In this document: positions 13,334 through 58,513 of the stretch, piece after piece
How positions within the stretch are numbered: the stretch's first letter is position 1
Layout: the number at the start of each line of letters is the position of its first letter
Origin: Stylophora pistillata
Taxonomy: Eukaryota
Direction: 5' to 3'
Assembly (NCBI RefSeq): GCF_002571385.2
Contig: NW_019218296.1
Span: forward strand, 38,176 to 102,175
DNA: 64,000 nucleotides
Translations under genes and position numbers: made by a program
The notes under the pieces: model-generated
Seen by the model: the letters and a program-made list of their open reading frames with translations, nothing else
Databases searched by the model: none
What the model was told of the DNA's origin: nothing

Positions 13334-14026
13334 TCACCTCTCTCCAACATCCTGTGTCTGAAATCAAAAGAATGTTGTCAAAACAAATTCAAATGATACT
13401 TAAATAAGTAAGTTAAACTATTGCATTCGACAGGTGGACCATGAACTCTTGACCATTCACGATTAGGACTCCGTAAACCTCTTCTTTGATAGTAAATTCA
13501 AGTCATCTTTGAGTCCCGGGATTATATTGCGATAAAAAGCTAAATGTAGACAAGAGAAACAACCTCGTCAAGACAGAGATAAAGTCATCAATTGTTTCTC
13601 ATACCTGTAGGGATGCCGCTTCTCTTCGTAACTCCTGTACAACCGAAGCTAGTGCTTCAGGATTCACTCCTGCTTCACACAACTTNNNNNNNNNNNAATA
13701 GAGCAGTTTGCGAGAGAGAGAACACTTCTAAGTTATAAGTTGAAACTAAGACATTCAAGCATTCTAAGATCAATGAACAAAGAGGGTAAGTTTCTAAAGA
13801 AACTGTAGTGCTGCGTCTAAGATCAGTTGTACACGATATCAACCTAAAGAAATATTAGTTTTGTAATTCAATTTTAGTCCAATCCACGAGCTTCCGATTA
13901 CATGGAACTATTAACTGTAGAGAATGATGCGTTTCTGTAACGGAAATGAGTGAAATACACGCCTAAAAAGATGCAACCAATACCTTCCATTGCTTCCCTA
14001 GCCGAAGAAACTCTGCTGTCCGCCAT
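13334..14026 (-). CDS. MZT1: Mitotic-spindle organizing protein 1 (MOZART1); part of exon 2 lost in an assembly gap
   Basis: Exon 1 14026-13984 MADSRVSSAREAME; visible exon 2 13685-13605 KLCEAGVNPEALASVVQELRREAASLQ; exon 3 13357-13334 TQDVGER*. The expected LNTGLD segment falls at the N run 13686-13696. Confidence 0.88.
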
Positions 14027-27700: not shown

Positions 27701-28049
27701 TTCATGTTTACGGACGCGACTCAAGCTGAAGTTCTGCACGTCCGCAATTTCTTAGAGGGGAAGTTTTATGTCGTGATTCAGAAAAAAGACAAGGATTCAA
27801 AGAAACATATTTTTGAATAGAGTACGGTCAGATCATCAAACCACTTCACCATTAGCTTTAGTTTGATGCTCTTTATGCATATCTTATATAGGAGCAGTCC
27901 ACGTTCAAGAAAGTAAGGTAGGGTCGGTTGTTTCCTTTTTCGTGTGTTTATCAGAATATCTTTTGCCCTTTCTATTGCTCGTTTAAATTAGTTGGTACTA
28001 CAACTTGATTAGAATAATTTCTTTAATGTTTGGAGGTAAATTCATGTTA

Positions 28050-28590
28050 GTATATTGAAAACTAAATGGTCTATTTAGCCGACAGGGAAGCAAGTGATAG
28101 TCGCGGGCTGATAAACTTGTGGCCTTGCGTAAATCTATAGTTATAGCTAAGAGGAATAGAATAAAATTTTCAAATACGAATACACAAAAACACGCGAATT
28201 AGCTCGATGAACCAAAAAGCCTAAGAATTACTTGATTTAAGTAATTAAAACACATTAACCGAAAGTACATTTCAAAACAAATTACTCTTTCTGGTCCCTA
28301 ACATCCTATTACGTATATTTTTCTTAAAAAGGGCTACAGAATCAACTTTCCTAGTAGATGAGGGTGCAATATTGCAGAGTCTTGCTAATACTGCAAATCT
28401 GCTCCCACCCTCAGTTTCTCTTTGATGTTCAAAGAAAAAAGCGTTAAAATCAGCGTACCGTGTATTCTGTGAATGGCGATTGTGACTGATTACCTGGTGA
28501 TCATCTATGTAGCTTGGTAGAGTCCCATGTACAAGTTTATACAGTACATGAGACAAACGTATTGGTATCAATTAGATAGGCCAAGTTAAA
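28050..28590 (-). mobile_element. Old LINE 3' fragment
   Basis: Peptide LYKLVHGTLPSYI...HSQNTRYA...RETEGGSRFAV...APSSTRK resembles CR1/L2 ORF2 C-termini. Confidence 0.6.
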
Positions 28591-30155
28591 ACAATATGAA
28601 ACAAATTGTCGTATTTTCCGCTTTGAAAGTTCAATAATTACTGCCGAAATAAAGCAGAAATACAGTATTGTTGATCAGCTGTTATCTCCGGCGAGTTAAA
28701 TAATGAGGGATAATGGTAAAATTAGTCAAACGCTGTGGAAGATTTCCGTAGTGTTTGGAAATCATAATGTTAAATTCCGGTAAGCTTTCCTTTTCGCTTT
28801 TTCGAATTCTAAAGAGGTGTTAATTGGCTTCAAATAAAGTGTTAAGCAGATGGTAGTTCGATCATTGTATGCATGCAATGCCGAATAAATCGAATACTCC
28901 TTTTTAAGGCATACCCTTTTAAGGGCTAAGAAAAATGAAGAGGCGGGAAGAAAACCCGTAGTAAAAAGGCGAGAGCCAACAAGGAAGTCACAGCGAGTGC
29001 TAAAGCAATACCGAGAAACTCGACATCACCGCATCACTTGATATAAGTACATAACAACTGACTCACATGATCCCGCCCTATGAGGTCATGGAATACAAAC
29101 AAGGAACGTATTTCTAACTAAATCTCTAGGTCATAAAATACCGCTCGGATCGAAAAATCCCATCTAGGCATGTCAAAATCTCCTACGTTTTTCGCTTTTT
29201 GCTCACAGTAAACCATGTAGGTTTATCGTGAGGAACGAGTTCGATTCCACATTAGAGGAGAAAATTATTTAACAAAGAATGCAAACTAAGTAGCGGATTA
29301 CTGAAACGAAAAATTAAGTTCAAATCTATGCGCATGACTCGTGACAGAGATGCACTGCAAGCACCACAACATTCAAAACCCCTTTTCATCACATAAGCCC
29401 AGTACCTAGTAACCACGCTATGCCGAAATAAAAGGAATAAATCCAACACCGCCAAAGATGCTATCGAATGATGATGATGATGAGGATGATGATAGTTTAT
29501 TAACACTTCTGGCAGTTAAAAAACTGAATAAACAGTGTAATTTTACAAGGACATTAAAAATAATCTTACTAGATACAAATAATAAAGTCTATTTACAATA
29601 ATAAGTCTTAATAATTATAATAATTGTAGTAAGTATTACAATAATAGTAAGTCTACGAATACCTAAAAGTAAAAAACTCATTTGCTCTTTTTGTTCTTTC
29701 ATTGTTGTTGTGGCTTTGGTATTTCCTGATCTTAACTGATAAGGTATACAACTTGTCATAGCTTGAAGAGCTAAGAAAGATATGGGGTGGTCTTCATTCC
29801 TCATTTCCGCCATCAAATTTTTACAAACGAATATCCTGCGATCTACCAACAATGACAATTTTGCCTGGTCTAGGGCTCGTTGATAACTATAATTTGGGAA
29901 TATAATCTTTAAGGCTCTTTTTTGTATGGATTCAATAGCATCAGAGAGGTATGCGGGAATGTCTTGCCACACTTCCGCAGCATACTCTAAGACCGATCTG
30001 ATATTACAAGTGTATACCTTGCGCATGTCTTCTAGCATTACTCCTGCGCGTTTCAACAACCTTAGAGCGTATAATTTCTTAGCTGCCTTGGCAGTCACAT
30101 ATTCAACGTGAGTGTTCCGTTTAAGGTCATCTCTAATTATATCTCCTAAAAGCTT

Positions 30156-30459
30156 GTGAAGGTGTAGTCTGATCGTCCGGGTGAGTGTAGTCCTGAGAAG
30201 GACTGTTGTCGGTGGCAGTGACTGACGTTTCGACAACCTGTGCGGAAGTCATCATCAGAGTCAAGTGAATGATTGTTGTCAGTAGATTGTCAACATTCTA
30301 CTGACAACAATCATTCACTTGACTCTGATGATGACTTCCGCACAGGTTGTCGAAACGTCAGTTACTGCCACCGACAACAGTCCTTCTCAGGACTACACTC
30401 ACCCGGACGATCAGACTACACCTTCACATGTTACCCCCGGGTTCAAACCATTTACTGCA
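30156..30459. mobile_element. Palindromic Penelope-like pLTR-derived insertion with a minimal hammerhead motif in each arm
   Basis: About 130-bp inverted arms; 12-bp TSD TCCTAAAAGCTT (30144-30155, 30460-30471); removal restores RT reading VGTYKLLGDIIRDDLK. Confidence 0.8.
30320..30364 (+). ncRNA. Minimal type I hammerhead ribozyme motif (mirror copy on minus strand at 30219-30263)
   Basis: TGACT-CTGATGA-T-GACTTCCGCACAGGTTGTC-GAAA-CG-TC-AGTTA: stem I, core, stem II, palindromic vestigial stem III, GUC cleavage triplet. Confidence 0.65.
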
Positions 30460-30946
30460 TCCTAAAAGCTTATAAGTTCCTACCCGCTCCACTTCTTGAT
30501 TTCCAACAGTTATAGGTCGTATTGCCGTAATCGAATTCTTCATAAAATTTACGTACATTTCTTTAAAATTTTTTGGGATTTAATTTCATCCTATGTTCTA
30601 TGCAATAATCATGGATTTCTCTGACAACTACATCTAGCATAGTAACGGAGTTCCTTGGAATGATCTCAAATGCAGTAGTGTCATCAACATACTTCGTACG
30701 CATATGCCAATTACTGAGTAGCTTGTTTATCATGACAGTAAAGAGCGTTAATCCGAGTTTTGTTCCCTGTGGGACGCCACCATTGACTTGTTTCCATGGT
30801 GACAGGGAGGAGCCAACGCGTACAGCCTGTGTCCGGTTGGTAAGAAAGGACCGAATCCAAAAAAACAGAGTTTGATCGATGTTGAACGATCTGAGTTCAT
30901 CTAACAATATTGAGTGGTCTATGATATCGAAACCTTTAGTAAAATC

Positions 30947-31531
30947 TTTAGTGTAATAGAAAATATCCGAGCCCCAGATGGGAAGTGAACCCACGACCCT
31001 CCGTGATCTAGTCGGATGCTCTAACCACTGAGCTACTGGAGACTCTATGGTGAGCAAGGGTCAATTTGTGGGCCTCGACTGGAACCGCATCGCGCGGCTA
31101 CACAGCCAAGTATTGGTAAGCACCTGTGAAAACTCACTAACAGCATCACGCTGTCACATTAAGGCATATCAAGATGCGGCCAACCAACCTCCAAAGTGAG
31201 CATGTAAAGATGAAAGAATTTTTAGTGTAATAGAAAANATCCGAGCCCCAGATGGGAAGTGAACCCACGACCCTCCGTGATCTAGTCGGATACTCTAACC
31301 ACTGAGCTACTGGAGACTCTATGGTGAGCAAGGGTCAATTTGTGGGCCTCGACTGGAACCGCATCGCGCGGCTACACAGCCAAGTATTGGTAAGCACCTG
31401 TGAAAACTCACTAACAGCATCACGCTGTCACATTAAGGCATATCAAGATGCGGCCAACCAACCTCCAAAGTGAGCATGTTAAGATGAAACAATTTTAAGT
31501 GTAATAGAAAATATCCGAGCCCCAGATGGGA
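30947..31531 (-). mobile_element. Tandem 2.13-mer of a 274-bp tRNA-like (SINE-like) unit
   Basis: Anchor CCGAGCCCCA at 30967, 31241, 31515; 12-bp TSD TTTAGTAAAATC (30935-30946, 31532-31543); minus-strand A box TAGCTCAGTGG and B-box-like GGTTCACTTCC. Confidence 0.85.
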
Positions 31532-33145
31532 TTTAGTAAAATCGGCAAAAAATATCCGAATAGAACAGTTACCTGAATCAATAGCTTCGTGTATAGCCTG
31601 CATTAAATAAATTTAGTGCGTACACTGTAGAGTGTCCATGACGTGAGTCGATAGAATCAAACACCTGATCTAACAGTCTTTTGTTTGTAAAACCCTCTTG
31701 TACTTTTGCTAAACAGCTTGTGAGTGCAATTGGTCTCAAGTCTGATTGAATGTTTTGAGGAGGGCAAACTTTAGGGACTGGTGAGATAATTGACTGTTTT
31801 AAAGTGTCAGGTACGAGACCTTTTCTCAGTGATTGATTGTAAATATCTTGAATCAATGATGCTAATTCGGGTGCAAATTGCTACAACAATTTGTTCGATC
31901 TTCCAACTGGTCCCACCGCTTTATGTATGGATAATTTGCGTAAGTCAGATGAAACTTCCTCTAAGGAAAACAAGCAACTCTGGTGGAATTACGTTGGGCG
32001 GAGTTTGGATTGGCGTTAAAGGTTCGAACTCTTGGGTTATACTAGTGAAGAAATCATTAATTTGAGTAGCTAGTTCTGCAGGACTGGTGATGACGTCACT
32101 TAGGAATTGATGGTACCGTTCCTGTTTACCAGATGTAACCTGCCCCGTCAGAGATATGATGTCTTTCCACCATTTCTTGGGGTTACTTTCAGCCAGACCT
32201 TTCACTTTGTTGTTGTAATAGGAGCACTTCGCTGTTTTAATAGCACCTTGGACTCTATTCCGCCAGAGTCTATAAATTGGCGATTCTTTCCCAAATTTAA
32301 TAAATGCTGCTTGTCGCTACTGAATCATAGATTTCAGTTTCACTGTGACCAAGGCTTATCGTATACATGGATTTTCACTGTTTTCCATGGAAAAAAGGTT
32401 TCAATAGCTGACTCTCCTAATGTAAGAGCGATTCCTGCCACGATACCGCGAGGTCGTCGTAAAAGGAACTCGGGTGTTGATTCGCACTTTAATTCGTTCC
32501 TTCGAAGTGGTGGTAACATTCTGATGGACTTGCCCTTTTCGGTTTGGAGATTGTTTGCCAGCTCGGACTCCCCTAAACCGGAGAATATCCAGATTTTTTT
32601 AATGTACGGAGCAAATTTTGGGACAGGTTGGATGTAGTATAGCGCCGTAATGAGAAGATGGTTTCTCGTCGATGTAAACAAAAACATCTCGCCGAGGACG
32701 GATGAAGAGTTTGCAAGGATCGAGAATTCTCGATTTCTGAGGGTCCAGGGTTCGTTTCCACATCCAGGAAGACTGTAAGATTGAAGTCTGGGTCTTTTCC
32801 AGGGATTTTAAGACATGTAAAGCCGCGTTTGGTGGATTTCAATCTCGGTTGACGGAAGCGGGTGAAACTTAAATGGCTTGTTAGCGTGTGTTTACAAGTC
32901 ACAGAAGATCACAACGTTTCAAAATGTTTTTATGATCAAATCCTTCCCTCTCTTTCGTTTCGAAAGATTTTGTATCAAATAAAATTCAATGAAAGAGAAA
33001 AAGGAATGTTTTCCGTTTTCAAATTTCTGTGTAGATCTGGAAATACTCACGATTGAATATCAGTAAAATATACGTATAGAGAACGTATGACGTCACTTAC
33101 TCAATCCGTCTTTAAAATACGTCATATATGTTTAAAGGTCTTTAA

Positions 33146-33400
33146 AATGGTCGTGACTTAAATGGATACTCCAAAATCAGGTTTCCGAGTAAGGACTGGA
33201 ACCTATTATTTCCGTTTTATTTCCTAACTGTTCTCGTTCAGGTTCGGCCCTCGTGACGTATTATGGATTAAGTATTACAGATTAAGATGAGGACAAAGAT
33301 CGTAAAAGGTCGGAACCTCATTTTCCGGAGAGTAATTTACTCACTCCCAGTCTCTACTCGCAAAACCTGATTCTGCAGTATCCATTTAAGTCACGACCCT
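33146..33400. mobile_element. MITE with about 40-bp TIRs and TTAA flanks (Kolobok-like)
   Basis: GGTCGTGACTTAAATGGATACTCCAAAATCAGGTTT versus AAACCTGATTCTGCAGTATCCATTTAAGTCACGACC; TTAA on both sides. Confidence 0.7.
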
Positions 33401-34471
33401 TTAAAATAGAGCTGTGTTGGTCAATATGCTGCCTAAACTCGTTCACAGGGTCTCTATCCTTCACATCCAGTAGTAAAATTTTAGTTGACACATAGATTCA
33501 GCAACTGAGCACTTCTCTGCCTAATTACAGGCGACCCTCAATTACTCAGTAAAACGAAACTCGGCCCCAAAATAAAGCCAGCTGACTTCATTTTCAGTCA
33601 GACGTTTAGACGTCTCCAAAAGTTTCACTGGCTTTCGCCGTGATGCATGAGAAGTTGGTTTTATGGCATGGAAGTCGATAGCTAAAACTAGTTAGCCAGG
33701 AAGAAAGAATATCTTGACCTCAATAGGATTTTAAAACAATTACGTCTCAAAAATTACCTGCGATTTCTTGGTCTTGCCTTGAGAATGTCAAACAGCCGTG
33801 GCCGCGGCCCTTCAACTAATGTTCCCAATATCTTGTCAGTTTATAGGGCTTTGTAAGAGAATATGATCTCTTGGGCTTTCTTATTCCATTTGATATAATG
33901 AAATTCGTTTAGCACGGGTGAAAAAATTTATTACTTCACGCGCTCTGAAGTTGTATTTTTGTTATGGTCGAGTAGAGGAGGAGTACATGACAGTGGTGGA
34001 ACGTTGGTTGCGTTGTGTCTCAAAGGAATTATTCAAATCAAACGCTTAGCGTGTTTTCAAAAAGTTAAATAACACTGTGATGTAATATAATATACGTTTT
34101 GCTGTAGTTATGGTTTTTTAAATAAAGTTTTTGGACTTTTTTGTCAATTATCGGACGTATGTCGTGGAAAATATTCAGTCAATAGTCTCCTTTCTAATAG
34201 GTATTCGATGAAATGATGTGAATTTGACTGCGTAACGACGTCATAGTAACAAAACTGAGATATTTTGATTTAATCTCACTCGTGGTCACTCGTGGTCACT
34301 CGTAGGTACTTTTAGACCCTATCTTATAATAATGCCTAACTGGGATTTCTAACAAATGAAAACGGGACAAACACAGTTTTCTTTCCGAGATTTCCATAAA
34401 GCTTTCTGTCGACTGAAATTATTTTTCTGCCATTAACTTCCAATGAATGTATTTTGTTGTAACTTTCAGAC

Positions 34472-36418
34472 ATGAGTGAATCTCTTCCTGGGTACGACAT
34501 CGCGATAGTTGGAGCTGGTGCCTATGGTACAGCGGTGTTGGGCCAGATATCCTTGCAGTCGTTACCCAAAGACCGACAGGAGTGCCGTGTTTTAGTGGCG
34601 GAATCCAGCCAAGAATTAGGACCGGGGATGCCATATGCAAAACACATGACAATTCCCGATCACATCGTTAACATTGCAGGTGGATGTACACAGATAACAG
34701 CAACATACATACCGCTCTCTGAACAATCGGATTTTTTAATTTGGCTCCGCTCACTTTCTACAAAACACCGTGCCAGTCTGGAAATTGACGAGGCTGAAAG
34801 TCCCACCTGGCTGCATAAACCATTTCCCAGATTTGTGGTGGGCCTCTACCTAAGCGACCGCTTCAAACAGTTCGTCGTGGCACTGAAGAAAAAGGGATTC
34901 ACAGTTGATGTGCGTAAACGGACAAAGGTTACTTCTGTTCGTCTAACAGAAGGAAAATTGGATACCCATGGATACGAGCTTTGTCTTGAAAAGGGGAATA
35001 AAGTCTTCGCTAAATATCTCTTTCTTGCCATAGGTCACTGGGCCTACAACAGATTTCCTGACTTTCCACGCTGGCTTCCTTCACCATTTCCACCAAAGGA
35101 AGTGCAAGAAAAGACCCAGCTAGGTTGGAACATTGGAATACTCGGATGCTCCTTATCAGCTATCGACGCGGCACTCACGCTAAGCAAAAAGAACGGATCA
35201 TTCCAAGCCAGTCATCAAAGTGGCGCAAATACCTTGAAGTTTGTTCCCATCAAAGGAGCTGAAGAATTCCAGATGACGATGTATGGACGCAAGGCATTGC
35301 TACCACAGGTCATGGGCGTGGTTGTGAACAAGATCTTTGCCCACAAGTACTTAACACCTTCATCATTTATTCCCATTATAGAAGCCAATGATGGATTTAT
35401 GCCTCTGGATGACTTTTGGAATCTGCTGAAGAGAGAGATTTATGATGAAGTTCCCCACCTTCGCCCCCATTTTCCAGATGACTGGGAGACGGTGTCGCTG
35501 GAAGACGTTGTCTCTAAAATGAAAATGCTGCTTCAAGCAACTGACCCAGTCGACAGATTAAGCCGCGAGCTCGAAGAGGCAAAAGAAAGTTTGATCAGTG
35601 GCGTACCACTACTCCTTCAGAATGTCTTTTATCAGTCCTATGCAATCTTTGACGAGGCTTTTAACTACTTTTCAGCAGAGGATCGCATCAGGTTTGAAGA
35701 AATCAAGACCGAGCTCCATCTGCTAATAGGCCCTTTTCCAGTTCAAAATGCCGAGAAGATCTTGTCTCTAATGAAAGGCGGCTACCTCAAGGTGACAAGG
35801 ATTGGCGAAGATTACAAAATTGACGAAGGAGAAGATAGATGTGGGGTCAAAGTATCGTGGAAATTTAATGAAGAATCTAGTTTTGAAGCCTGTCACGATG
35901 TGATGGTGGATGCTACTGGTCAGAAGGGTGTATTTGAGAAAGATCCTTCCCCACTGACGAAATCGCTGAATGAAGGAAAGCTCATTAGCGAGATTTTGGT
36001 TCCTTTTCGGAACATCTCGGAGTCCGAGAGGCATGAAAATCATCCAAATGTGGTATTAAGGAATGGAGCGAAGTATTTCCGTCCATCTGGTGCTCTCATA
36101 GACATGAATAATTTTTCTCTCGTACCTGCCGCTGAAGATCCTGGTGCACCCCCTATCTATTACATGGGACCGTTTACTATAGGGCAGGTAGCATTTCCTC
36201 AAGACATGAGCGTAGTCACAACCGCCGCTGAACGGTCTGTAGAGGATCTTATAGAGAGAGGTGTGCTGGAACGTGACGACAGTTATTCAGCCGAGCAAGA
36301 TCCGATGCCAATGTATGGATGGTTGCCGAACGCCAAGGGAGACGTGTCTGGACAGATGGGTAAAATGACCAGGATCCTTTCATCCAAAGGACAAAATTCT
36401 CAAACAAAAGAACTGTAG
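34472..36418 (+). CDS. Intronless FAD/NAD(P)-binding oxidoreductase-like protein, bacterial YdhS / NAD_binding_9 family-like (648 aa)
   Basis: Uninterrupted ORF. Ordered motifs IAIVGAGAYG, GPGMPY, NIA, FLIWL, FPRFVVGLYL, LAIGHW, PSPF, IGILGCSLSAIDAA, GRKALLP, GEDYKI, VDATGQ parallel those recalled for E. coli YdhS. Confidence 0.85.
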   Translation: MSESLPGYDIAIVGAGAYGTAVLGQISLQSLPKDRQECRVLVAESSQELGPGMPYAKHMTIPDHIVNIAGGCTQITATYIPLSEQSDFLIWLRSLSTKHRASLEIDEAESPTWLHKPFPRFVVGLYLSDRFKQFVVALKKKGFTVDVRKRTKVTSVRLTEGKLDTHGYELCLEKGNKVFAKYLFLAIGHWAYNRFPDFPRWLPSPFPPKEVQEKTQLGWNIGILGCSLSAIDAALTLSKKNGSFQASHQSGANTLKFVPIKGAEEFQMTMYGRKALLPQVMGVVVNKIFAHKYLTPSSFIPIIEANDGFMPLDDFWNLLKREIYDEVPHLRPHFPDDWETVSLEDVVSKMKMLLQATDPVDRLSRELEEAKESLISGVPLLLQNVFYQSYAIFDEAFNYFSAEDRIRFEEIKTELHLLIGPFPVQNAEKILSLMKGGYLKVTRIGEDYKIDEGEDRCGVKVSWKFNEESSFEACHDVMVDATGQKGVFEKDPSPLTKSLNEGKLISEILVPFRNISESERHENHPNVVLRNGAKYFRPSGALIDMNNFSLVPAAEDPGAPPIYYMGPFTIGQVAFPQDMSVVTTAAERSVEDLIERGVLERDDSYSAEQDPMPMYGWLPNAKGDVSGQMGKMTRILSSKGQNSQTKEL

Positions 36419-37911
36419 GCTTTGGACCATAGGAAAAAAAAGTTAAAACAACTGGGATTTCATAGCCATATGCATTTTATAAGCCAAAATGTGTAGTGTC
36501 GTCAATTATCCCCATATGACAGAGCTGAATAGCATATGCGCACGCGCTAGATTTTGACGCGGCGGGAAAACGGAATTTGAGTCGTTCGCATTGTTGACTT
36601 TCTATTCTGTTGCTTTAATTGAGGCGTTGTTTTCCTTACCGCTTTTCTTTTACAGAACAACTTCCAAGAACGTTGCACACCCACTGAATATTTGATTTTC
36701 TCCTTAAAACCTTTGGAAATAGGAAAATGCCTTCGACATCAACAAAATTACTCGGTTTTAAATGTCAGCTCCTTATTATTTTCGCAAAGTCCACTAAATT
36801 TTAATCCTCTCACGCTTGAGCCCGTGTTGTTTACCGCATACCTTTGACGTAACGTTTCGTTATTTAGCTCTGTCTCCCCATATATGAGATTGTAGTTTTG
36901 TTGATGACAAAATAAGTCATTAGCTTTTTTACATTTGATCTTACTTTGTTTTAGTTGTTTCACGAGATTTTCTACATTCTGAAAAAAAGTTACATGACAC
37001 TGCAGGTTAATTTTTTAATGCTGCACCTTTCCAAAACAAACTAAGAACCTGCTTTGTTCTACGTTCAGATAAAGGTCTCGACTGGGCTGGTCAAAGCACG
37101 ATTGAGTCAATCCAGGTTAGAGGCAGATTTTTAAAGCTTAGCAGGAAGGTTCATTTTTCATTTCTCCTTTCGCCGAGTTTGCCTTACACTAAGTTAAATC
37201 CCACAAAAAAAAAAAAAAAAAAAAAGCTGTTTAAACTAAATAATTAAGTTAAAAAAAAAAAAAAAACTGGCTCAACCAGTGTGCAAGAGAAATGTACACA
37301 CAAGAGAAACATTTACAAAGAGACTTAATATAAATTTTATTTGTTTACTGCTGTCTATAAAGATCTGATGGTTTCCTTTATTAACCTATAATACCAGAAA
37401 CGTCAGGTGTACTTGTGAAGCAAAGAACATCAAGGAATCCTTGTAAAAACTCTAGGCTTCTTAGCTGAAGGCTCAGGTAGTCTGCATGGACATGAAACTG
37501 AATTAGCTGAATGGGAGATAAAGTTTTTAATATACAATATAATTTAAAGAAACTTTGACTGTATAAGTTTTTATTGCATTTTGACTTTCTTGGTTCAGTA
37601 AGTGTGTATTTTTTTAAATATAGCGTAACATTTATACGGTTTGCTTCAAAGGTTACACCTTGTTCCATTTACTTCTATGGATCTTCCGAGTGTCACTGGT
37701 CGCAATATTCTGGCCACTGATTCCGCGCAACTTGAATTCAATTGCTGCATGCCCGCTTGTGTTATCTTTCGAAACAAGAGTGATACCGGCAGGCCAGTTT
37801 TATGTGCTTCTGTCAGCGATGTTGCTATTGTTCAACAGCACTTTTACTCGATCATTCCTAATCGCAGAGATACGCTGGTGCCTATCCACATCTAACTACT
37901 TTCTTTCTTCA

Positions 37912-38161
37912 TGCAGTAAAATAGTTTGAACCCGGGGGTAACATGTGAAGGCGTAGTCTGATCGTCCGGGTGAGTGTAGTCCTGAGAAGGACTGTTGTCG
38001 GTGGTAGTGACTGACGTTTCGACAACCTGTGCGGAAGTCATCATCAAAATCAAGTCACTTGACTCTGATGATGACTTCCGCACAGGTTGTTGAAACGTCA
38101 GTCACTACCACCGACAACAGTCCTTCTCAGGACTACACTCACCCGGACGATCAGACTATAC
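37912..38161. mobile_element. Second palindromic hammerhead-bearing insertion, opposite orientation
   Basis: Near-identical to 30156-30459 with a shorter centre; 13-bp TSD CTTTCTTTCTTCA (37899-37911, 38162-38174); hammerhead motif at 38060-38104. Confidence 0.8.
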
Positions 38162-38489
38162 CTTTCTTTCTTCAATTCCTCTACACTCATTTCGCACCAA
38201 ATCAGGACAACCACTAACTACTGATACCCCGCGCACACTTTCTAAGCAATAACTGAATAGGGAGTCTTCACAGAGGAGGGTCTGTTAATGATGCTAGCAC
38301 TCGACTACGTTAGTTCTCAGGGCCCGGCTGTTTCCTGTGCTGCACAGATTATCCCTTTTTCTGAAGACATCCATTCTGCATCTATCTCCAAAATTCTTTT
38401 AGCAGGAGAGGGGGTCCTATATCGTCCTACAGTCACTCAGGGGTAACATACCAGGGTGTTTAATCATTACAAAATTCACCTTTTCTCGA

Positions 38490-47100: not shown

Positions 47101-50100
47101 AGGCTTACTGTCTACTAGTCTTGTATTGTATTATTATTATTATTATTGTATTATATTATTATAATAATACAATAATTATATTATTATTGTATTATAATAT
47201 TATTGTATTATTATTATTGTATTATTATAATATTGTAATATTACTAAGATATTGCAAGTTTGTACAGTACTGGCCACAGGAATAGCCGGCAGATTCACCC
47301 GCAAATTATGCGTGCATTAAATTTTACTCGGACTATTACATCATGCGCCTTGAATTACACTGTACAGTCAGTCTGTGTGTGATTTGACACAAGTAAAAAC
47401 TGCCATGTCCATTATAGCCACTTGTCTGTATTTTCCACTTGGAAGTGTACAGGAATCTGTGCATTCTCCCATAAATTAACATTGTAAACAGTTACCTGTG
47501 TTGCACATGAAATGGCATGTAGCTAACAAGGTTGGTTTCACTCATCAAATTATCAAATGAAATATATGTTTATTGAACATGCCTATATCCTTAAATTTGC
47601 CACTTACATTGCAGAATACGTGCTTGTTTTATTCCATGAAGAAGGTCTATGGTTAGAAGCTCAGATATAATGTTCTGTGAGCCAACCAAAATCATGGAAT
47701 TTATGAAAGACCACATATTCCATCTTAATGGCTAGTTATTGTGATTTGTTAGTGTAATCAGGATATTGTAAAATAATGTTAGATGTTGATCTTTTAAAGT
47801 GTTTTTGTTCCATCAGATGGCACTGAAGCACCATCCCGATAAAAATCCTGATAATCCTGAAGCGACAGAAAAAGTAAGTCAAACTTTGCTTAAGAGAAAA
47901 AGGAAATGTTTGGGTCAATATAAGTCTTGGAATACTTTGAAACTCCTAGAATGAGGCCATATTACTGTCAGGAATTTTGGGGAGGAGGCATGACTGAAAC
48001 AAATTTTGCATGTTTTGTGCCAAAAGGCTTTTAATGATGTGATGTGGCTGTCATCCTTCATGAAAACAAACTCCAATTATAATTATCTTTTCTGAGTGTA
48101 TCCAAATGTTTGGTCTTTTTCAGTTTAAAGAAGTCAATCATGCACATAGTATATTAGCTGATCCCAGTAAAAGGGAAATTTATGACAAATATGGCTCTAT
48201 GGGTCTCTATATAGCTGAACAATTTGGAGAAGAGGTAGGGTCAAATTGATTGATTTTTGTTTCTAGTGAATTAAGCAATATTTTTTATGACTGTGTTTTT
48301 GCAAGGAATTTTATTGCAGAGCTTTGTTAAAATTTGTCTCAACTGTTTGCTTTGTGAAAGATTATTTTGGAAATAACAACCCTTCATGGAAGACTGAGTT
48401 TACAGATGTCTTTAAAGCAATATCAAACTTAAAAAGAAAAAAATTCCCAGCAACATTACATGACATAATTTCAATTAAAAGGCCATTTGTTTAAAAAACC
48501 TTCACCCTCTGAATGATGCCAACTGCTTTGCCTTTCTCATGAAAATTAGTGGTATATATCTCTTGTACAAACCTCTTAGTCCAGTGATGTTAACCCATGA
48601 GTGACCAAGACAGAACATCTCCTTACTGTAGCAATACAATATCAAGCAGACAAATGATGAGAACAGAGATAAATATCAATGAGGAGATTATTGGTTGATC
48701 CAATACCAAATTCTCCAAACCAACATCAGAAATTGTAGAGCAGACAGTAAGGAGAATTAGGAATGAGATCTTGGGAGTGAAAGCTCTAACCCTAAGACAA
48801 TGCATTTCTTTCTTGGCTAGCTGTGAGAATTTGCTGTTATTATCAACTTAGTACGTGTGTATGACAGTGTATCAAACGTCAAGTAGAATTGATTAATTAT
48901 CACTGGTGAAATGCCTCTTGGTAGAGTTTTACGTCCTTCTCCCCACCCCTCCCCGGTGTGCAGGTATTTGAAAAGGGTAATGGTGACATTTGGTGGAGCA
49001 TACATGTAGCAAATTGAAAAATTTATTTAAAAATGCCAAGTATTGGGTGCCATATAGGACAATATTGTTTGCCCAAAAAATAAAATGCAAAAGTTATGTA
49101 TATATGGCATGGATCAAATAAATATATGAATAGAATATATGTGCAACATATATATGGCATGGACCAAGTCAATATATATGGTTGAATAAAGGCTGATAGT
49201 TTCTAAAGAAACTGTTAGGGGCTGTGTCGGTGGGGGTAACGAAATAATTTGGATATATCAACAAAGTTGAAATGGTAAATTGGCCACCGTAACGATTAGA
49301 AAAGCTGACGTTTCGAGCGTTAGCCCTTCGTCGGAGCGGATAGAGGAATTGTGGGTTGCGTGTGCTTTTAAGGATGGGATACGATCAATTTAGAATACAA
49401 ATTTCAAATAGTTAAGCTTTTTTATAGAGTAAGTAAAGGCAGAAAATGGAGCTACGTTATTGGTGGGAACATGGCAACGAGAAAAACACGAATAAATTAG
49501 TGNNNNNNNNNNNNNNNNNNNNNNNNNNNNNNNNNNNNNNNNNNNNNNNNNNNNNNNNNNNNNNNNNNNNNNNNNNNNNNNNNNNNNNNNNNNNNNNNNN
49601 NNNNNNNNNNNNNNNNNNNNNNNNNNNNNNNNNNNNNNNNNNNNNNNNNNNNNNNNNNNNNTACTCCCACTGTCGACTTACTTGTTCGCCAGATTATTGA
49701 TCAACCTCATTTCAAAAAAGGCTTGCAAGCTAGGTCTTCCGATAGTTCAAGTTCAAACCCTGAAACTTCAACTCAAACAGCAGTTTCTGGAGCAGGAACT
49801 CAGGAAGTTAGCCGTTCTCAAAGTGGAGGAGCCTCGAAGCAGGCAACAAATATTTAGAAACTGACTTTTTAAGCCGATGATTTCTTCATACAAGAGATAA
49901 AGTGGCTCAAGTAAACTTTCGCCAGTGCTTTGCACTTCGCACTCAAATATGAGACACCTTACAACTTATGCAGGATCATCTAATCGGCGTTCAAAATACG
50001 CCAAGACGTTGATGTTTTCAGAGTGAAGATTTCTACGAGCTTGACGAAAAAGGGATGGAATAGAGCTCTCGAAAAATTGCTCTAAATCATCAATCCTGTC

Positions 50101-53100
50101 ACGGGCCGTCATGTTATTTTTTTTATCAATCTTCCGCTTACCAAATTGACAATGGGCACAATAACCATATATAGTTTTCGCGCATTTGCCCCATATTTAT
50201 ATCGTATTTGGTCCATGTCATATATATTCCATTCATATCATATTTATTTCATCCATGACATATATTCAACTTTTGCACTTTATTTTTGCGCCAACAATAT
50301 TGTCCCACGCGGCACGCCATATTGTAACCGGTGGTTTCTCTCTCTCTCTCTCTCTCTTGTTTTTTAATTTTTTTAAATTTTTTTACGAAGGGAGAAAACA
50401 CTCCTCGCAACTGAAAAGTTCGTATAAACCTTTCTGTTACCGAATTAAGTATTTAATTTCTTAAGGATATGAAAGAAAAATTGAGGAGGCCCCCATGATT
50501 ATCGAGCCGCGGTCGATGTTTTATTGTTGTATTCTTGTTTCAAGCTTCACCTTGTATTGTTAAAAGCAATTACAAATAATTTTTTAGGCAAATTAGGGCT
50601 GAAAAGTTCTTTACAGGGAATAAATTGAATGATTTCGTAGTTTTCTTCTCTCTGTGAGTGTTTTATTTTTTCAAGTGCAGCCTGCAAATGATTTATTTAA
50701 CATGACGAAAATTCTTGAATTACACTTAAGCAATTTTAATTATTTATTCAAAAGTCTGACCAATCAAGGTTTTAGTATTTCGTTTTGAAAGAGAAGGAAA
50801 ACAAACTTTGTTCATTGTTTCCAAAGCTAAACATTTTGAAGGAACGTTGCACCTTGGTTGCACGGAGAAAAGGGTAAACTTGTTTTCACACTGAGAAAGG
50901 AACCCCATTCGTACAATGTACAAAAACTAATGTCAATTAGGGCATAATTGAAAGGAAAAGAGCTGATTTACTTTGAAAATGTCCTTGCCTGAAAGAAAAG
51001 AGAGCACTCCAGCTGATAATGAAAGCTCTTTGTTTTGGCGTTGGAATCGGCTTCAAGTAAATGCTATGGAAGATCCTGAATTGCAGAATGTGCAAACATT
51101 TTACAATTCGGCCAAAATAACAAGCCAGTCTCGGTTACTTTTTGGAGCGCAGAGCAGGATTGTTGACGCCGAGAATTCCTTGAAGATGGAAAAAGATCAG
51201 AAGACGAGAGACCCGCAGAAAGATTTGACAGAGAAGTCGACATCAAATGAAAGCCAAGAAAAAGAAATTGAAAATGAAAGAAAAGTTTTAAGGACTGTAA
51301 TAGGCGCTGAGAAAGGGAAATCAAACCCATTCGAGTACTTTAAACAGCATCGATATGATAAAGACCTGGACCTGAATGGATGGGTGCTGGGCCCGATAAG
51401 GGCATATGAAATTGCTTCGGAACTTCTCCCTTCCTCGACTGTTGTCAGTTTGTTTCTTGCAAACAACCGCCTTGGAAATGAAGGGGGCAGGGCCATTGCA
51501 GAAGGACTGCAGAGGAACTGTTCTGTTAGGGAGCTGGATTTGTCTGGAAATATGCTCGGGCGAAACTCAGTCTCCAGTATTGGAGAGATGCTCAGACAAA
51601 ATCGAACTCTGGAAAAGTTGAATCTCTCGAGAAACGATCTTACAGACCAAGACATGGAAGTGTTTCTGGACTTTCTCAGCTCCGAAACTGTCCTAAAAGA
51701 GCTGGACTTATCGCATAATATTTTATGCGATCAATTCGGCGAACATATGTCGCGAGTTTTAAAGAGTAATATTATTCTCGAAAAGCTTTTTCTCAGCTCA
51801 AATCAACTCGAAGTTACGGGCTTAAAAGCCTTGATGCCTGGTCTTCGATGCACGCAATCGCTTCGGGCTTTGAACATTTCGTGGAATTACTTGTACGACG
51901 TCGGAGCCAAAATTCTTGGCGAAATAATCGCTAACAACGAAAGCCTAATTGAAATCTCAGCCTGTGGAAATCTATTCACAGCCAAAGCAGCCAGCTTCAT
52001 TGCTAAGGGTGTTGTTAATAACTCAAATTTGAAAATTCTTCGCATTGGTCAGAATTTGATAAGAAACTCTGGGGCGTATGCATTTCTCGATGTCTTATCT
52101 CAAAGCGGTTCATCTTTGAGCGCGCTGGAGATTTTGGATATCGATGGTACCATTGTTGACCAAAAATTTAAAGAAAGAGTAGACACTGACTTATCTCAAT
52201 GGCCCGGTGCATTAAAGGTTGTCAAAGCTTCAGTAGTTGATGAAATTTCTAACGAGCTGGAACAGTTTGTAGAAAAATCGCCTGAAGATCTTTCGTTCTG
52301 ATTTAAGTCCATCAGATTTTTTGTTAAAGAAAAATGTTATGAAATATTAATTGACTGATAAGGAATAACTTAAAAATTCACAATTTTCATTTTTTCGATA
52401 AAAAAATTACATGTTAGATGTAGATTACCTTGCGCACAGAGTTTTGAAGATTGATTTCTTCATTATACAGTGGAATAAACCGTGTTTACAACTTCTGTAG
52501 AATGTATTTGTTTTGAATACATTCAGTTCATTTCACACTTGCCATTCCTCATGGGCGTTTTAAATTAGCAGGCTACTTTTAATGTAACTAGTTCAATGGT
52601 GAGACCTTGGGCAGATAAATGAAAGAGATTAGTAAACGAATTTTGTGTTCTCTTAACCTCTCCAGCAAATGAGTTGTGTGATATCGAAAGAAACTTTGAG
52701 CAGTCTTCAATTTGGGTGTCGAAAGTAATCCGGCTTTGCATTGGTTGGCTTTACTTCGCTCTGTGATTGGTCCAGAAATCCGGCACCATCCTTTCAACCA
52801 ATCAGATGCTTTAGGCGCCTCGGTTGTTTTTACTTTAAGCCCTCATTGGCTCTTAAAGATATTTTCCTTTCATGTAATTGGCCGTTATGGTCACTTTTCT
52901 TTTGGTTTTACGACACTCAACCGAGAAGCGCTATATTGCCCCTAATTTGGCTATCACAGCAAAGGGGAATATTGGCCATGGATCTGCAGATGTCTAAATT
53001 AGTATATTTTGCGCAATTTTTTCGCTTCGTGAACGGTCCTCTTGTTCAAAGCCTGGCGAATCAGTCGCACACAACCTTACTTTGTCTTTCCCTCTCCATC

Positions 53101-56479: not shown

Positions 56480-57269
56480 AGGTCCGGGAATCAAAGCTAA
56501 TAGTGGTGCCGAGGCGAGCGTTCTCATCACTGCGCCATTCCTCTCACGTGACATATCTTTGTCAGCCAGTCCTAATAAACTGAATTCAAAAGTGCATGCA
56601 TCTCTTAGCCTAGATTTCTGTGATTGACAGTGCCACGATTAACGATGAATCCTACTTTATCACGTGATCAGACATGCTTATAGGACTGAATCAAAGGTGT
56701 AAGCTCCTCCCATATTATTGTGAGATCATAAGAGCTGTTAGAGGTTTTGTCTCAGTCCAGCCCTCATCGTCCCCAATCTCCTCCCACTCTACCATGTCTA
56801 CTATGAGATCAACGTCGTTCCAAGGGTCCCCCCCCTGAGAACTTGACCGAAGAATCCAAAGGGTGACTTCTACGCAGCTAACTAAAGCAATGGTGCAAGA
56901 AGAACCCGTGGGGAAGGAAAATGGCCCAAACCTTTATTACATTTGCCAGTCAGTTTGATTTTCATCTGTTTATATATTAATTTTTTTTTTGAAGGAAGAT
57001 TAACATTCCTGTAATAGTTTGTGAGTGTTGAATCTTCTTGAATAATCATTTTTGTTCTCTTCAAAATAACCATGGTGGTTTAGCTCGCACGCAATCCGAG
57101 TACGTAACGAAGACCTCCTGGACACAACATTGTCAGCTACATGACAACATCTTGCTCAGCTGACCAGAATAATTACGGAACACATTTTCAAAACACCCGG
57201 TGTCTTCAGAAAACGTGCGGGTTAGAATGCCCAGTTTTCAACTGCTCTAGCAGCTTGATCCTTTTTCCA

Positions 57270-58513
57270 ATGGATGAAAGGGAAGAGGGAGTTTCCGAGC
57301 GTCCTCTTAAATCATTACACAACAGAATCGAATCGCCAGTTCTGTTTGTAAATCACACAGGACGAAGAGTCAATTTGAAATGGTTTGATTACAGTGGCGA
57401 GGAAAAGTTGTTCGCCACTATTGTAGGTGGAACGAACAATCGCCTTAAAATGAACACATATGTGACGCATCCTTGGATTGCAGTCGACGAAGAAACAAAT
57501 GAAAGACTGTTATTGAACTTTAGGGAAACATTTTTCCCCGACGAGCCTGTTATACAGCGAGTAGACTTTGATGCCCGCAGATTTTATGTAGTGAGAGCGG
57601 AAATAAACATCACAACACCAGGTTAGTTGTTGTTCGCAGATTTTAGCTTCCCTAGGACGTATCCGCCAATCGAAAATACTGTGTGGAAGAGTAAGAGAGT
57701 AACAGACAACAATCATGTGGAGTAATGTAGCAGATAGTCGTTCCAAAGTTTAGAAGACATAAATGTGCTACTGGAAGCTTTAAAGGGGTTGTGTATCCTT
57801 CTAAGTTTCTGATCTAATTCGCAGTTATGAAGTATATACCTTAAAGGATGATGTGGGTATAAAAAATTAGTAATATTCTGTACCATTTTCTATTGATGGC
57901 ATTTAAAAAGGTGTCACAACTGTTTGGTGTTTGGTTCCCTTTTGCCTGATAATGACAGAGTTGCTTGCAATCCCCCCCCCCTCCATTCCAGTCATATACT
58001 GAACATGGAGGGGTGATATTAAGGCTGACATGACCTTTGAAAATGTGAAATATAAAATAAATGAAAAAGTTTTGATAATCACTGAAAATAGGAAAAATTT
58101 TCACAGGGTCACACCTGGCGATTTTATACTCTGACCACTGCAATGGGAAAAAATCGCCAGGTAAGCCAGAGCTGCGATTACGAGTTTTGCCTTTCACTGA
58201 TTTCTGGGGAGTCAGATACCAGCGATTTTATACACCCATTGCAGCAATCAATTTCACTACAATCGCTGAATAAAAAACGCAAGCTAACTTACCTGCTATT
58301 GAAAATTCTTGAAATTGAGGAGATGAAAGTTGACTTGCACTACCTTGACCTTTCTAGCTTATATATGTATTTGAACTGATTAGCTGTCTCTTTGACCTGT
58401 TAAAAATCTCTTGTGTGACTGGCTCAGCTAAAACCTTTAATGTAAGTATCACTACTATTATTTATTATTTATTTTTATCTGCTTGTTTTATTATTTATTT
58501 ATTTAATTGTTGT

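What the first reader, a model, noticed from the sequence alone, without database searches (positions are those of the whole stretch)
34472..36418. Intact bacterial-type YdhS-like flavoprotein gene in an animal genome: candidate horizontal transfer
Seen: a 1947-nt intronless, stop-free ORF amid decayed repeats, contiguous with animal-type elements and with no assembly gap nearby. Known (from recall): the motif series GAGxxG, GxGMPY, PRxxxGxY, AxGH, GxSLSxxDAA, GEDYK, DAxGQ follows E. coli YdhS and related bacterial FAD/NAD(P)-binding proteins of unknown function; I know no standard metazoan ortholog. Inference: an acquired, maintained redox enzyme giving the host a new metabolic or chemical-defence activity. 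Substrate unknown.
Basis: partly seen in the sequence, partly recalled or inferred. Interest (0 to 1): 0.82.

Follow-up and report, generated by a model that had tools for sequence, protein, structure and literature searches.

The report
Ancient bacterial flavin monooxygenase gene in corals
This coral (very probably Stylophora pistillata) carries an intact, expressed, selectively maintained gene for a bacterial-type FAD/NADPH monooxygenase that the ancestor of corals most likely took from a bacterium long ago; the gene is already in public annotation, and its substrate is unknown.

Summary
It matches Pfam PF13454 (E 5.5e-17). It also matches the E. coli YdhS model, but far below that model's ortholog cut-off (103 against 783 bits).

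The genome is very probably Stylophora pistillata. The gene is already deposited as hypothetical protein PFX16854.1.

It is not a contaminant:
- It is single-copy.
- Animal genes flank it (TYW2, LRR, VHL).
- The locus is colinear over 13 kb with an independent assembly of a related coral.
- Orthologs sit on a 64-Mb Oculina chromosome and on octocoral scaffolds.
- Transcript contigs from two studies break at a canonical splice acceptor 2 nt before the ATG.
- dN/dS is 0.11-0.24.

In trees the anthozoan sequences form one clade (100/99). That clade is nested among bacterial proteins. Its nearest kin (35-40% identity) lie on contigs with bacterial gene content.

The predicted structure (pLDDT 91) matches the aspartate N-hydroxylase FzmM over its full length (Z 26.3). 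The alignable aspartate-binding arginines are replaced.

Verdict: an old bacterium-to-anthozoan transfer of a class B flavin monooxygenase. Substrate unknown. Moderately interesting, and a new member of a known kind.

The parts
28026..28035 (+). Putative end of exon 1 (ATGTTTGGAG, followed by a GT donor at 28036-28037). It would supply the four extra N-terminal residues (MFGD) of the deposited S. pistillata model. The 5' limit of the exon is not determined; it must be at least ~105 nt long if it is the only upstream exon.
   Evidence: The deposited protein P0246 (PFX16854.1) equals MFGD plus the window ORF. The 12-nt pattern derived from it occurs once in the window, against 0.03 expected by chance. 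The sequence was read. This is inferred; it was not seen directly in reads.
28036..34469 (+). Putative 6.4-kb intron. It has a GT donor, and a polypyrimidine tract plus CAG acceptor ending at 34469. It holds a reverse-transcriptase fragment and two tRNA-like elements.
   Evidence: Contigs of runs X1 and X2 (two different studies) cover the whole ORF. A canonical acceptor, tattttgttgtaactttCAG, lies just before AC-ATG. The same acceptor is conserved in the 88% relative.
34472..36418 (+). Conserved single-exon reading frame of 648 codons plus stop: a PF13454 FAD/NAD(P)H flavoprotein.
   Evidence: single copy in the 397.6-Mb genome. (the only PF13454 match in the genome). dN/dS 0.11-0.24.
34502..35038 (+). 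N-terminal FAD-binding dinucleotide fold (Pfam PF13454 hit, residues 11-189). It includes GAGAYG (34511-34528), the invariant Asn67 (34670-34672) and the (L)A(T/I)GHW motif (35027-35041).
   Evidence: Conserved columns. Asn67 aligns with FzmM Asn62.
35129..35173 (+). Second dinucleotide-binding motif (IGILGCSLSAIDAAL, residues 220-234), the presumed NADPH domain. The near-invariant Arg273 (35288-35290) follows it and aligns with FzmM's Ser-Arg-Arg.
   Evidence: Conserved columns G225, L228, S229, D232 and R273. Alignment to 8cp2. That Arg273 contacts the NADPH phosphate is inferred from class B monooxygenases.
35357..35776 (+). All-helical domain (residues 296-435) wedged between the two dinucleotide-binding domains. 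This is the presumed substrate-binding domain.
   Evidence: Secondary structure of the model. Full-length superposition on FzmM. FzmM's architecture as described in PMC10404684.
36419..36724 (+). Minimum 3' untranslated region seen in transcript contigs. It may run on to about 37650.
   Evidence: The X1 contig reaches 36616 and the X2 contig reaches 36724. Further contigs cover 36698-37653. No AATAAA or ATTAAA occurs before 37900.

Best explanation
This is a genuine nuclear gene of a stony coral, very probably Stylophora pistillata. It descends from a bacterial gene that was transferred once into an early anthozoan. The transfer most parsimoniously predates the split of Hexacorallia and Octocorallia. 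Since then the gene has acquired eukaryotic features: a 5' intron and host-like base composition. It is transcribed and has been kept by purifying selection.

The product is a three-domain flavoprotein of the PF13454 family, which also includes YdhS, HpyO, CreE and FzmM. Its most likely mechanism is that of a class B flavin monooxygenase:
1. NADPH reduces the bound FAD.
2. O2 adds to give a C4a-(hydro)peroxyflavin.
3. One oxygen atom is passed to a small nucleophilic substrate held by the helical domain. An amine nitrogen (N-hydroxylation) is the most probable target.

The substrate is not L-aspartate.

Shown: the ORF, the family, the fold, integration in the host genome, the distribution, the tree position and the selective constraint.
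Inferred: the direction and date of transfer, the chemistry and the substrate class.
For: Integration in the host genome:
- The gene is single-copy in a 397.6-Mb genome.
- Animal genes lie in the same window.
- The locus is colinear with an independent coral metagenome scaffold from 32.9 to 46.3 kb. Identity is 87.5% in the ORF and 72-81% in the flanks.
- Orthologs lie on a 64-Mb Oculina chromosome next to a GPCR, and on Dendronephthya scaffolds of 416 and 462 kb.

Identity of the genome: cluster member PFX16854.1 of Stylophora pistillata equals the window ORF plus 4 residues.

Eukaryotic features and expression:
- Contigs from two small runs (92 and 115 million letters, under 0.3x of the genome if they were DNA) cover the ORF at depth 12-20.
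- The same runs show zero depth in the upstream stretch 33288-33878.
- Both contigs break at the canonical acceptor.
- GC3 is 0.45, against 0.33-0.43 in neighbouring host exons.

Selection: dN/dS is 0.17, 0.11 and 0.24.

Bacterial origin:
- An exhaustive HMMER search of 1.84 billion representatives gave only 532 hits. Apart from the two coral-type representatives and short fragments of coral-like identity, the full-length hits scored about 22-40% identity.
- The nearest relatives lie on bacterial contigs. P0040 (40%) sits next to a MocR-type regulator and an MFS pump. P0041 (35%) sits in a dense operon. P0189/P0031 sit behind a Shine-Dalgarno site in a P450/ACP/adenylase cluster.
- Trees: anthozoan clade 100/99; with the P0040/P0041 lineages 94/73; with P0031 100/99. 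All of this is nested among bacterial rows, including named Bacteroidota.
- The nearest ESM Atlas clusters are 100% Bacteria.

Function:
- The AlphaFold model has pLDDT 91 and pTM 0.91.
- Foldseek's top hit is FzmM (8cp2) at E 1.5e-23.
- VIA-align gives Z 26.3, rmsd 3.4 A and 523 of 600 residues aligned. N-hydroxylases follow (KtzI, PvdA, DesB, SidA) at Z about 19-20.
- A profile search of the PDB hits 8cp2 at E 2e-15.
- The cofactor motifs, Asn67 and Arg273 are conserved.
Against: - No eukaryote outside Anthozoa was identified among the named hits. However, most database entries carry no name. The host of the deepest eukaryote-like branch (P0030, on a 5.7-Mb contig) is unknown.
- The donor lineage was not identified. 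401 sampled Bacteroidota genomes gave at most 30% identity.
- The gene tree is not fully congruent with the species tree. The cluster holding a Paramuricea (octocoral) protein groups with hexacoral sequences.
- The raw-read RNA run X24 (2% of it read) put no read on the ORF. The runs that do cover it are labelled RNA only by guess.
- The exon 1 to exon 2 junction was not seen directly.
- No biochemical data exist for any close relative. The family also holds a C-hydroxylase (HpyO) and members of unknown function, so N-hydroxylation is only the likeliest of several chemistries.
Confidence: 0.75

Rival explanations
1. Same gene and same origin, but a different chemistry. The enzyme could hydroxylate carbon (as the urate hydroxylase HpyO does), oxygenate sulfur, or act as a plain NAD(P)H-dependent oxidoreductase rather than as an N-hydroxylase.
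For: - PF13454 is named after both HpyO and CreE (cluster name).
- E. coli YdhS itself has no known function (one search gives the family only).
- Two-dinucleotide-domain reductases (Bdr/YpdA, thioredoxin reductases) also score Z 15-19.5.
- The alignable Asp-binding arginines of FzmM are absent: R13 aligns with Y18, R266 with M281, and R276 lies in an FzmM-only insertion.
Against: - The full-length match is to an N-hydroxylase: 523 residues, helical domain included, Z 26.3. The next tier of hits, at about Z 20, is almost entirely amine N-hydroxylases.
- There is no CxxC pair as in thioredoxin reductases (sequence).
- The nearest bacterial relatives sit beside amine-handling genes: a MocR regulator, and gamma-glutamyl ligase and hydrolase families.
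Confidence: 0.25
2. The gene is an ancient eukaryotic or metazoan gene, inherited vertically and lost in every lineage except Anthozoa. No transfer took place.
For: - The gene is old within Anthozoa, and octocoral sequences branch outside the hexacoral ones.
- Most database proteins are unnamed, so other eukaryotic holders could be hidden.
Against: - The exhaustive search found only two eukaryote-type representative clusters, P0018 and P0030.
- Every named eukaryotic hit is an anthozoan.
- The anthozoan clade is nested within bacterial diversity, with bacterial sister lineages at 35-40% identity while the rest of the family is at 22-32%.
- This scenario would need many independent losses.
Confidence: 0.08
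3. The ORF is a relic that merely happens to be still open. It was transferred or retained but no longer functions.
For: - No function is known.
- Run X24 gave no reads on the ORF.
- No canonical poly(A) signal occurs within 1.5 kb of the stop.
Against: - The frame is open at full length in Stylophora, its 88% relative, Oculina and two Dendronephthya loci.
- dN/dS is 0.11-0.24.
- The ORF is more conserved (87.5%) than its flanks (72-81%).
- Cofactor motifs are intact.
- Transcript contigs exist in several studies.
Confidence: 0.03
4. Bacterial contamination or a chimeric assembly join.
For: - The protein is of bacterial type.
- A single N lies 3.2 kb upstream.
Against: - The same flanks appear in an independent assembly of another species.
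- Orthologs lie on chromosome-scale or large scaffolds of other corals.
- The splice acceptor sits 2 nt before the ATG, and transcripts break there.
- Composition is host-like.
- The best bacterial relative is only 40% identical.
Confidence: 0.01

Closest known systems
FzmM / CreE L-aspartate N-hydroxylases (nitrosuccinate-forming flavin monooxygenases; PDB 8cp2, 8cp5; PMC10404684)
   Same: - Same Pfam family.
- Same three-domain build: two dinucleotide-binding domains with a helical domain wedged between them.
- Superposes over 523 of 600 residues at Z 26.3.
- The Asn in front of the flavin (FzmM N62 / coral N67) and the Ser/Gly-Arg after the NADPH-domain strand are conserved.
   Different: - Only 16% identity.
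- The arginines that hold L-aspartate are not kept where they can be aligned: R13 aligns with Y18, R266 with M281, and R276 sits in an FzmM-only insertion.
- The helical-domain arginines (R409, R412, R416) could not be mapped here.
- The coral protein has a conserved C-terminal tail (NAKGxxxGQMxxMT) that is shared only with its nearest bacterial kin.
- No nitrosuccinate-lyase partner lies nearby.
E. coli YdhS (NCBIfam PRK09897, COG4529), function unknown
   Same: Same family and the same N-terminal motif series. The profile matches residues 10-491 at E 9.4e-30.
   Different: - 103 bits against an equivalog cut-off of 783, so it is not an ortholog.
- The coral protein is about 110 residues longer.
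Amine N-hydroxylases of siderophore pathways (SidA, PvdA, KtzI, DesB, DfoA, NbtG; class B flavin monooxygenases)
   Same: Both dinucleotide-binding domains superpose, at Z 17-20 with about 353-409 residues aligned. They share the NADPH/FAD/O2 logic and the ATG(H/Y)-type motif.
   Different: They lack the large helical domain. Identity is 12-15%. They belong to a different Pfam family.
Other bacterium- or alga-derived genes of Anthozoa (41 cases in Bhattacharya et al. 2016, eLife, PMC4878875; mycosporine pathway genes)
   Same: - Shared by many anthozoans.
- Nested in non-metazoan clades.
- Located among host genes.
- Metabolic or stress-type enzymes.
   Different: No flavoprotein of this family is named in that paper's Table 1. 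Three entries there are only 'predicted' or 'hypothetical' protein, so overlap cannot be excluded.

Membership tests
Pfam PF13454 NAD_binding_9 (YdhS / HpyO / CreE-type FAD-NAD(P)-binding proteins) | Profile match above the curated gathering score | tested here: met
   62.6 bits against a cut-off of 21.8, residues 11-189. A genome-wide family search gave 66.2 bits at the same place.
Pfam PF13454 NAD_binding_9 (YdhS / HpyO / CreE-type FAD-NAD(P)-binding proteins) | N-terminal GxGxxG and the family's invariant columns | tested here: met
   G14, G16, E44, G50, G52, N67, R120, G124, G188, H189, G225, D232 and P278 are conserved across 102 sequences.
YdhS proper (NCBIfam NF007381 / PRK09897 equivalog) | Whole-protein score above the equivalog cut-off (783 bits) | tested here: not met
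   103.3 bits. The nearest bacterial kin P0040, P0041 and P0189 also fail it.
Aspartate N-hydroxylases (FzmM/CreE) | Three-domain fold with a helical substrate domain between two dinucleotide-binding domains | tested here: met
   Z 26.3, rmsd 3.4 A, model residues 7-599 on chain residues 2-601. Helices span 296-435 in the model. Architecture as in PMC10404684.
Aspartate N-hydroxylases (FzmM/CreE) | Arginine cluster that binds L-aspartate (R13, R266, R276, R409, R412, N413, R416, R577) | tested here: not met
   R13 aligns with Y18. R266 aligns with M281. R276 falls in an insertion with no counterpart. The helical-domain arginines could not be aligned with these tools.
Class B flavoprotein monooxygenases | FAD and NADPH bound by two Rossmann-type domains; C4a-hydroperoxyflavin chemistry | tested here: inconclusive
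   Both domains and their motifs are present, and the fold matches N-hydroxylases, FMOs and BVMOs. Cofactor binding and catalysis are not testable here.
Horizontally acquired gene in an animal | Nested with support inside a clade of the donor domain | tested here: met
   Careful tree: anthozoans 100/99; anthozoans plus bacterial P0040/P0041/P0031 lineages 100/99; all inside bacterial rows. Same result in the 105-row tree.
Horizontally acquired gene in an animal | Physically linked to host genes in independent assemblies | tested here: met
Horizontally acquired gene in an animal | Absent from other eukaryotes | tested here: inconclusive
   None was found among named hits or representative clusters. 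Most entries are unnamed, and no eukaryotic genome set could be searched directly.
Horizontally acquired gene in an animal | Transcribed and processed as a host gene | tested here: inconclusive
   Contigs of small runs cover the ORF and break at a canonical acceptor. The deposited two-exon model fits a unique upstream site. The runs' RNA label is a guess, and raw-read run X24 gave nothing.

The most novel reading that the evidence does not exclude
Anthozoans gained bacterial-type N-O chemistry through this transfer. Under this reading, the enzyme N-oxygenates a host or symbiont amine (not aspartate) to a hydroxylamine, N-oxide, nitroso or nitro compound. It would thereby feed a coral-made metabolite used in defence, metal binding or nitrogen exchange with the symbionts. 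No such pathway is known in any animal.
Probability: 0.15. Interest if true: 0.7.

Novelty: new member of a known kind. Interest (0 to 1): 0.45.

Why it matters
Corals are known to carry several dozen genes of bacterial or algal origin. Many of these extend stress and small-molecule metabolism. This gene adds a flavin monooxygenase of a family whose few studied members make N-hydroxy or nitro building blocks, or hydroxylate urate, in bacteria.

It is conserved in stony corals and octocorals and is under clear constraint. It therefore probably performs a reaction that animals otherwise lack.

Finding its substrate could uncover an animal-encoded step in coral natural-product or nitrogen chemistry that is now credited to the microbiome. 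It would also give the first functional handle on the clade formed by this gene and its rare, uncharacterised bacterial sisters.

Tried and rejected
- Sequence search of the PDB with the single protein: blank. Only the profile searches reached 8cp2.
- The search for related loci with the 14-sequence alignment failed for lack of a conserved stretch. The 4-sequence alignment found only distant Bacteroidota genes at 24-28% identity.
- Donor hunt, part 1: 401 sampled Bacteroidota genomes gave at most 30% identity to P0040.
- Donor hunt, part 2: the glutamine-synthetase-like neighbour of P0041 found nothing in 201 Bacteroidota genomes. The donor phylum stays unknown.
- Viral vector: no relative in IMG/VR contigs.
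- Logan contig L003 was hoped to be a transcript of the 88% relative. It is colinear with the metagenome scaffold, so it says nothing about splicing.
- Raw-read RNA run X24: no read on the ORF in the 2% that was read. This is no evidence either way.
- The hosts of P0030 and P0024 could not be named.
- Literature: no paper holds the gene's accession numbers, 'PF13454', or 'YdhS' with coral in a relevant sense. Bhattacharya et al. 2016 do not list it by name.
- Synteny between Stylophora and Oculina or Dendronephthya flanks: none detectable within +/-10 kb.
- Contamination, a chimeric join and a dead relic were considered and rejected (see rivals).
Full report
OBSERVATION

It runs 34472..36418 on the + strand, starts with ATG, and has 648 codons plus a stop. 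The next-longest ORF in the 64-kb window has 442 codons.

Pfam PF13454 (NAD_binding_9) matches residues 11-189 at E 5.5e-17, 62.6 bits against a cut-off of 21.8. The NCBIfam model of E. coli YdhS (PRK09897) matches residues 10-491 at E 9.4e-30. That is only 103 bits against an equivalog cut-off of 783. 'YdhS-like' is therefore correct for the family and wrong for orthology.

The window holds three runs of N: 13686-13696, a single N at 31238, and 49503-49661. None touches the gene. I filled in none of them.

WHOSE GENOME

The genome has 397.6 Mb in 5513 contigs. The gene occurs once in it, and it is the only PF13454 match there. A member of the 90% protein cluster is PFX16854.1, 'hypothetical protein AWC38_SpisGene18842 [Stylophora pistillata]'. 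It has 652 residues, identical to the window ORF except for four extra N-terminal residues. So the window is very probably S. pistillata, and the gene is already public as an uncharacterised protein. An earlier follow-up in this scan on another piece of the same genome reached the same species.

NOT A CONTAMINANT

- The same window carries a TYW2/TRM5 methyltransferase exon, an LRR ORF and a VHL beta-domain ORF. A reverse-transcriptase fragment lies upstream of the gene.
- An independent scaffold from a Tara coral metagenome encodes an 88%-identical protein. It is colinear with the window from 32.9 to 46.3 kb. Identity is 87.5% in the ORF and 72-81% in the flanks.
- Orthologs lie as single open frames on a 64-Mb chromosome of Oculina patagonica, 5.5 kb from a GPCR gene, and on two Dendronephthya gigantea scaffolds of 416 and 462 kb.
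- ORF GC3 is 0.45. Neighbouring host exons have GC3 of 0.33-0.43.

GENE STRUCTURE AND EXPRESSION

Runs X1 and X2 come from two studies and hold 92 and 115 million letters. That would be under 0.3x of the genome if they were DNA. Each has one contig covering the whole ORF, at depth 19.5 and 12.2. Both have zero depth over 33288-33878.

The orientation of minus-strand records was checked on record 6 of the same table. It places the unmatched letters upstream of 34468.

The genome at that point reads: polypyrimidine tract, CAG, then AC-ATG. This is a canonical 3' splice site ending at 34469. The same site is kept in the 88% relative. Oculina and Dendronephthya have pyrimidine-tract-AG sites 20-43 nt before their ATGs.

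The deposited model starts MFGD. That requires an upstream exon ending ATGTTTGGN-G followed by GT. This 12-nt pattern occurs once in the window, at 28026-28037, against 0.03 expected. It implies a 6.4-kb intron. Exon 2 was always used by reference.

A genuine metatranscriptome (X9) covers the ORF thinly, at depth 2-7. It also covers parts of the intron, so it is weak evidence. The raw-read run X24 gave nothing in the 2% that was read.

My reading is that the gene is transcribed and spliced. This is likely, not proven.

SELECTION

Nei-Gojobori dN/dS values:
- 0.17 against the 88% relative (dS 0.35).
- 0.11 against Oculina (dS saturating).
- 0.24 between the two Dendronephthya paralogs.

DISTRIBUTION

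The word-indexed search returned about 30 close proteins at 48-88% identity. All named ones are anthozoan (lineages):
- Oculina, Montipora, Desmophyllum and Stylophora, covering both suborders of Scleractinia.
- Dendronephthya (two genes) and Paramuricea, both Octocorallia.

The exhaustive HMMER pass over 1.84 billion representatives gave only 532 hits at E <= 0.001. Full-length eukaryote-type hits fall into only two representative clusters, P0018 and P0030; some short fragments of coral-like identity were also listed. P0030 sits on a 5.7-Mb contig of an unnamed assembly. It is equidistant (41-50%) from all corals and has no named close kin.

ORIGIN

The next-best hits are P0040 (640 aa, 40%, E 1e-118), P0041 (728 aa, 35%) and P0031/P0189 (about 820 aa, 31-35%). 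Their contigs are bacterial:
- P0040 lies beside a MocR-type PLP regulator and an MFS exporter.
- P0041 lies in a dense one-strand array. The array includes tsaE, kinase/nucleotidyltransferase genes, an O-methyltransferase, four Peptidase_C26/GATase genes and a glutamine-synthetase-like gene.
- P0189 follows an AGGAG ribosome-binding site. It precedes PNPOx, P450, carrier-protein, adenylase and acyl-CoA dehydrogenase genes.

These proteins align end to end with the coral protein. P0040, and loosely P0041, also share its C-terminal tail.

Support values (ultrafast bootstrap / SH-aLRT) in the careful 52-row tree (LG+C20+F+G4 PMSF):
- Anthozoan sequences form one clade: 100/99.
- That clade joins the P0040/P0042 and P0041/P0043 lineages: 94/73.
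- P0031 is added: 100/99.
- The whole group sits among bacterial rows, including named Mucilaginibacter, Terrimonas and Olivibacter genes.

The 105-row quick tree agrees. The nearest ESM Atlas clusters are 100% Bacteria.

Within the anthozoan clade, the Dendronephthya genes branch outside the hexacoral group (91/94). This fits vertical descent from a common anthozoan ancestor. The cluster that contains a Paramuricea protein groups with hexacoral sequences, which I cannot explain.

The donor phylum is unknown. 401 Bacteroidota genomes gave at most 30% identity, and IMG/VR holds no relative.

WHAT THE PROTEIN IS

The AlphaFold2 model, built on a 102-sequence alignment, has mean pLDDT 91 and pTM 0.91. 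It shows two beta/alpha dinucleotide-binding domains and an all-helical block at residues 296-435.

- Foldseek's best PDB match is the L-aspartate N-hydroxylase FzmM of Streptomyces sp. V2 (8cp2, 8cp5): E 1.5e-23, TM 0.66-0.72.
- VIA-align gives Z 26.3, rmsd 3.4 A, and 523 residues aligned over model 7-599 and chain 2-601.
- That is clearly above the next tier at Z about 19-20 and about 390-410 residues. This tier consists of the amine N-hydroxylases KtzI, PvdA, DesB, DfoA and SidA. Small FMOs and thioredoxin-reductase-like proteins follow.
- A profile of the family finds 8cp2 at E 2e-15.

[quoted passage not shown] It also describes an arginine cluster that holds L-aspartate (PMC10404684).

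In the HMMER alignment:
- FzmM Asn62, which sits in front of the flavin, aligns with the family-invariant Asn67.
- FzmM Ser257-Arg258-Arg259 aligns with the near-invariant Arg273.
- Arg13 aligns with Tyr18.
- Arg266 aligns with Met281. This position is Arg in most bacterial members, but Met or Thr in corals and their nearest bacterial kin.
- Arg276 lies in an FzmM-only insertion.

So the cofactor machinery looks intact while the aspartate site is not kept.

MECHANISM (INFERRED)

1. NADPH reduces FAD.
2. O2 adds to form the C4a-(hydro)peroxyflavin.
3. Oxygen is transferred to a nucleophilic atom of a small substrate bound by the helical domain.

An amine nitrogen is the most likely target, on three grounds: the full-length structural kinship, the second tier of hits, and the amine-handling neighbours of the bacterial sisters. 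Hydroxylation of carbon (as by HpyO) or another redox role is not excluded.

The N-terminus shows no obvious signal-peptide-like hydrophobic stretch by eye, so a cytosolic location is my guess. No prediction tool was run.

COMPARISON WITH WHAT IS KNOWN

Horizontal acquisition of bacterial and algal genes by anthozoans is well documented. Bhattacharya et al. 2016 list 41 cases, 28 of them dating to the anthozoan ancestor. No flavoprotein of this family is named there, although three entries are unnamed proteins. No paper in the searchable library mentions this gene's accessions, or PF13454, or YdhS in corals.

The scan itself has already flagged other bacterial-type genes in this genome.

This is therefore a new, well-supported member of a known kind. 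It is not a new kind of thing, and the gene itself is already annotated.

VERDICT

- Observation: confirmed.
- Interpretation: supported, with the corrections that the transfer is ancient and anthozoan-wide, and that the nearest characterised relative is FzmM rather than YdhS.
- Interest: moderate (0.45). The case for transfer is clean, and the enzyme family is chemically intriguing. But the phenomenon is familiar and the function is open.

Noticed in passing
window 37948-38164: A near-perfect palindrome: two 108-nt arms, 95% complementary, 1 nt apart. In RNA-type runs this stretch has a summed contig depth of thousands to tens of thousands. Even raw-read run X24 shows 80-130x here with many strand-switch joints. 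It looks like an abundant, transcribed, hairpin-forming repeat (MITE-like).
   Followed up: partly
window 30970-31042 and 31244-31316 (- strand): Two Rfam tRNA matches (43 and 41 bits) lie inside the putative intron. They flank the single N at 31238. The first overlaps the ORF with the reverse-transcriptase fragment (30566-31057). They could be tRNA-derived SINE heads or real tRNA genes.
   Followed up: no
L009:5154-6330 (Dendronephthya gigantea scaffold RSEI01000850.1): A second, partial copy of the gene lies about 4.8 kb upstream of the intact paralog P0020. This suggests tandem duplication in the octocoral, possibly with one decaying copy.
   Followed up: no
L011:9295-20431 (bacterial contig with P0041): The bacterial sister gene sits between an O-methyltransferase and a run of four Peptidase_C26/GATase genes plus a 668-aa glutamine-synthetase-like gene. 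The set is reminiscent of gamma-glutamyl-amine carrier pathways. It may hint at the substrate class of the whole clade.
   Followed up: partly
Protein cluster of P0017 (member CAB4007518.1, Paramuricea clavata): A protein deposited for an octocoral groups with hexacoral sequences rather than with the Dendronephthya genes in the tree. Possible causes are ancient paralogy, a rate artefact, or foreign DNA in that assembly.
   Followed up: no
window 36419-37900: No AATAAA or ATTAAA occurs within 1.5 kb downstream of the stop codon, although transcript contigs run on to about 37650. The 3' end of the mRNA is undefined.
   Followed up: partly
window 4748-5527, 50973-52298, 57141-57623: Host-type coding pieces: a TYW2/TRM5 methyltransferase exon, a leucine-rich-repeat ORF of 442 codons, and a VHL beta-domain ORF.
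   Followed up: partly
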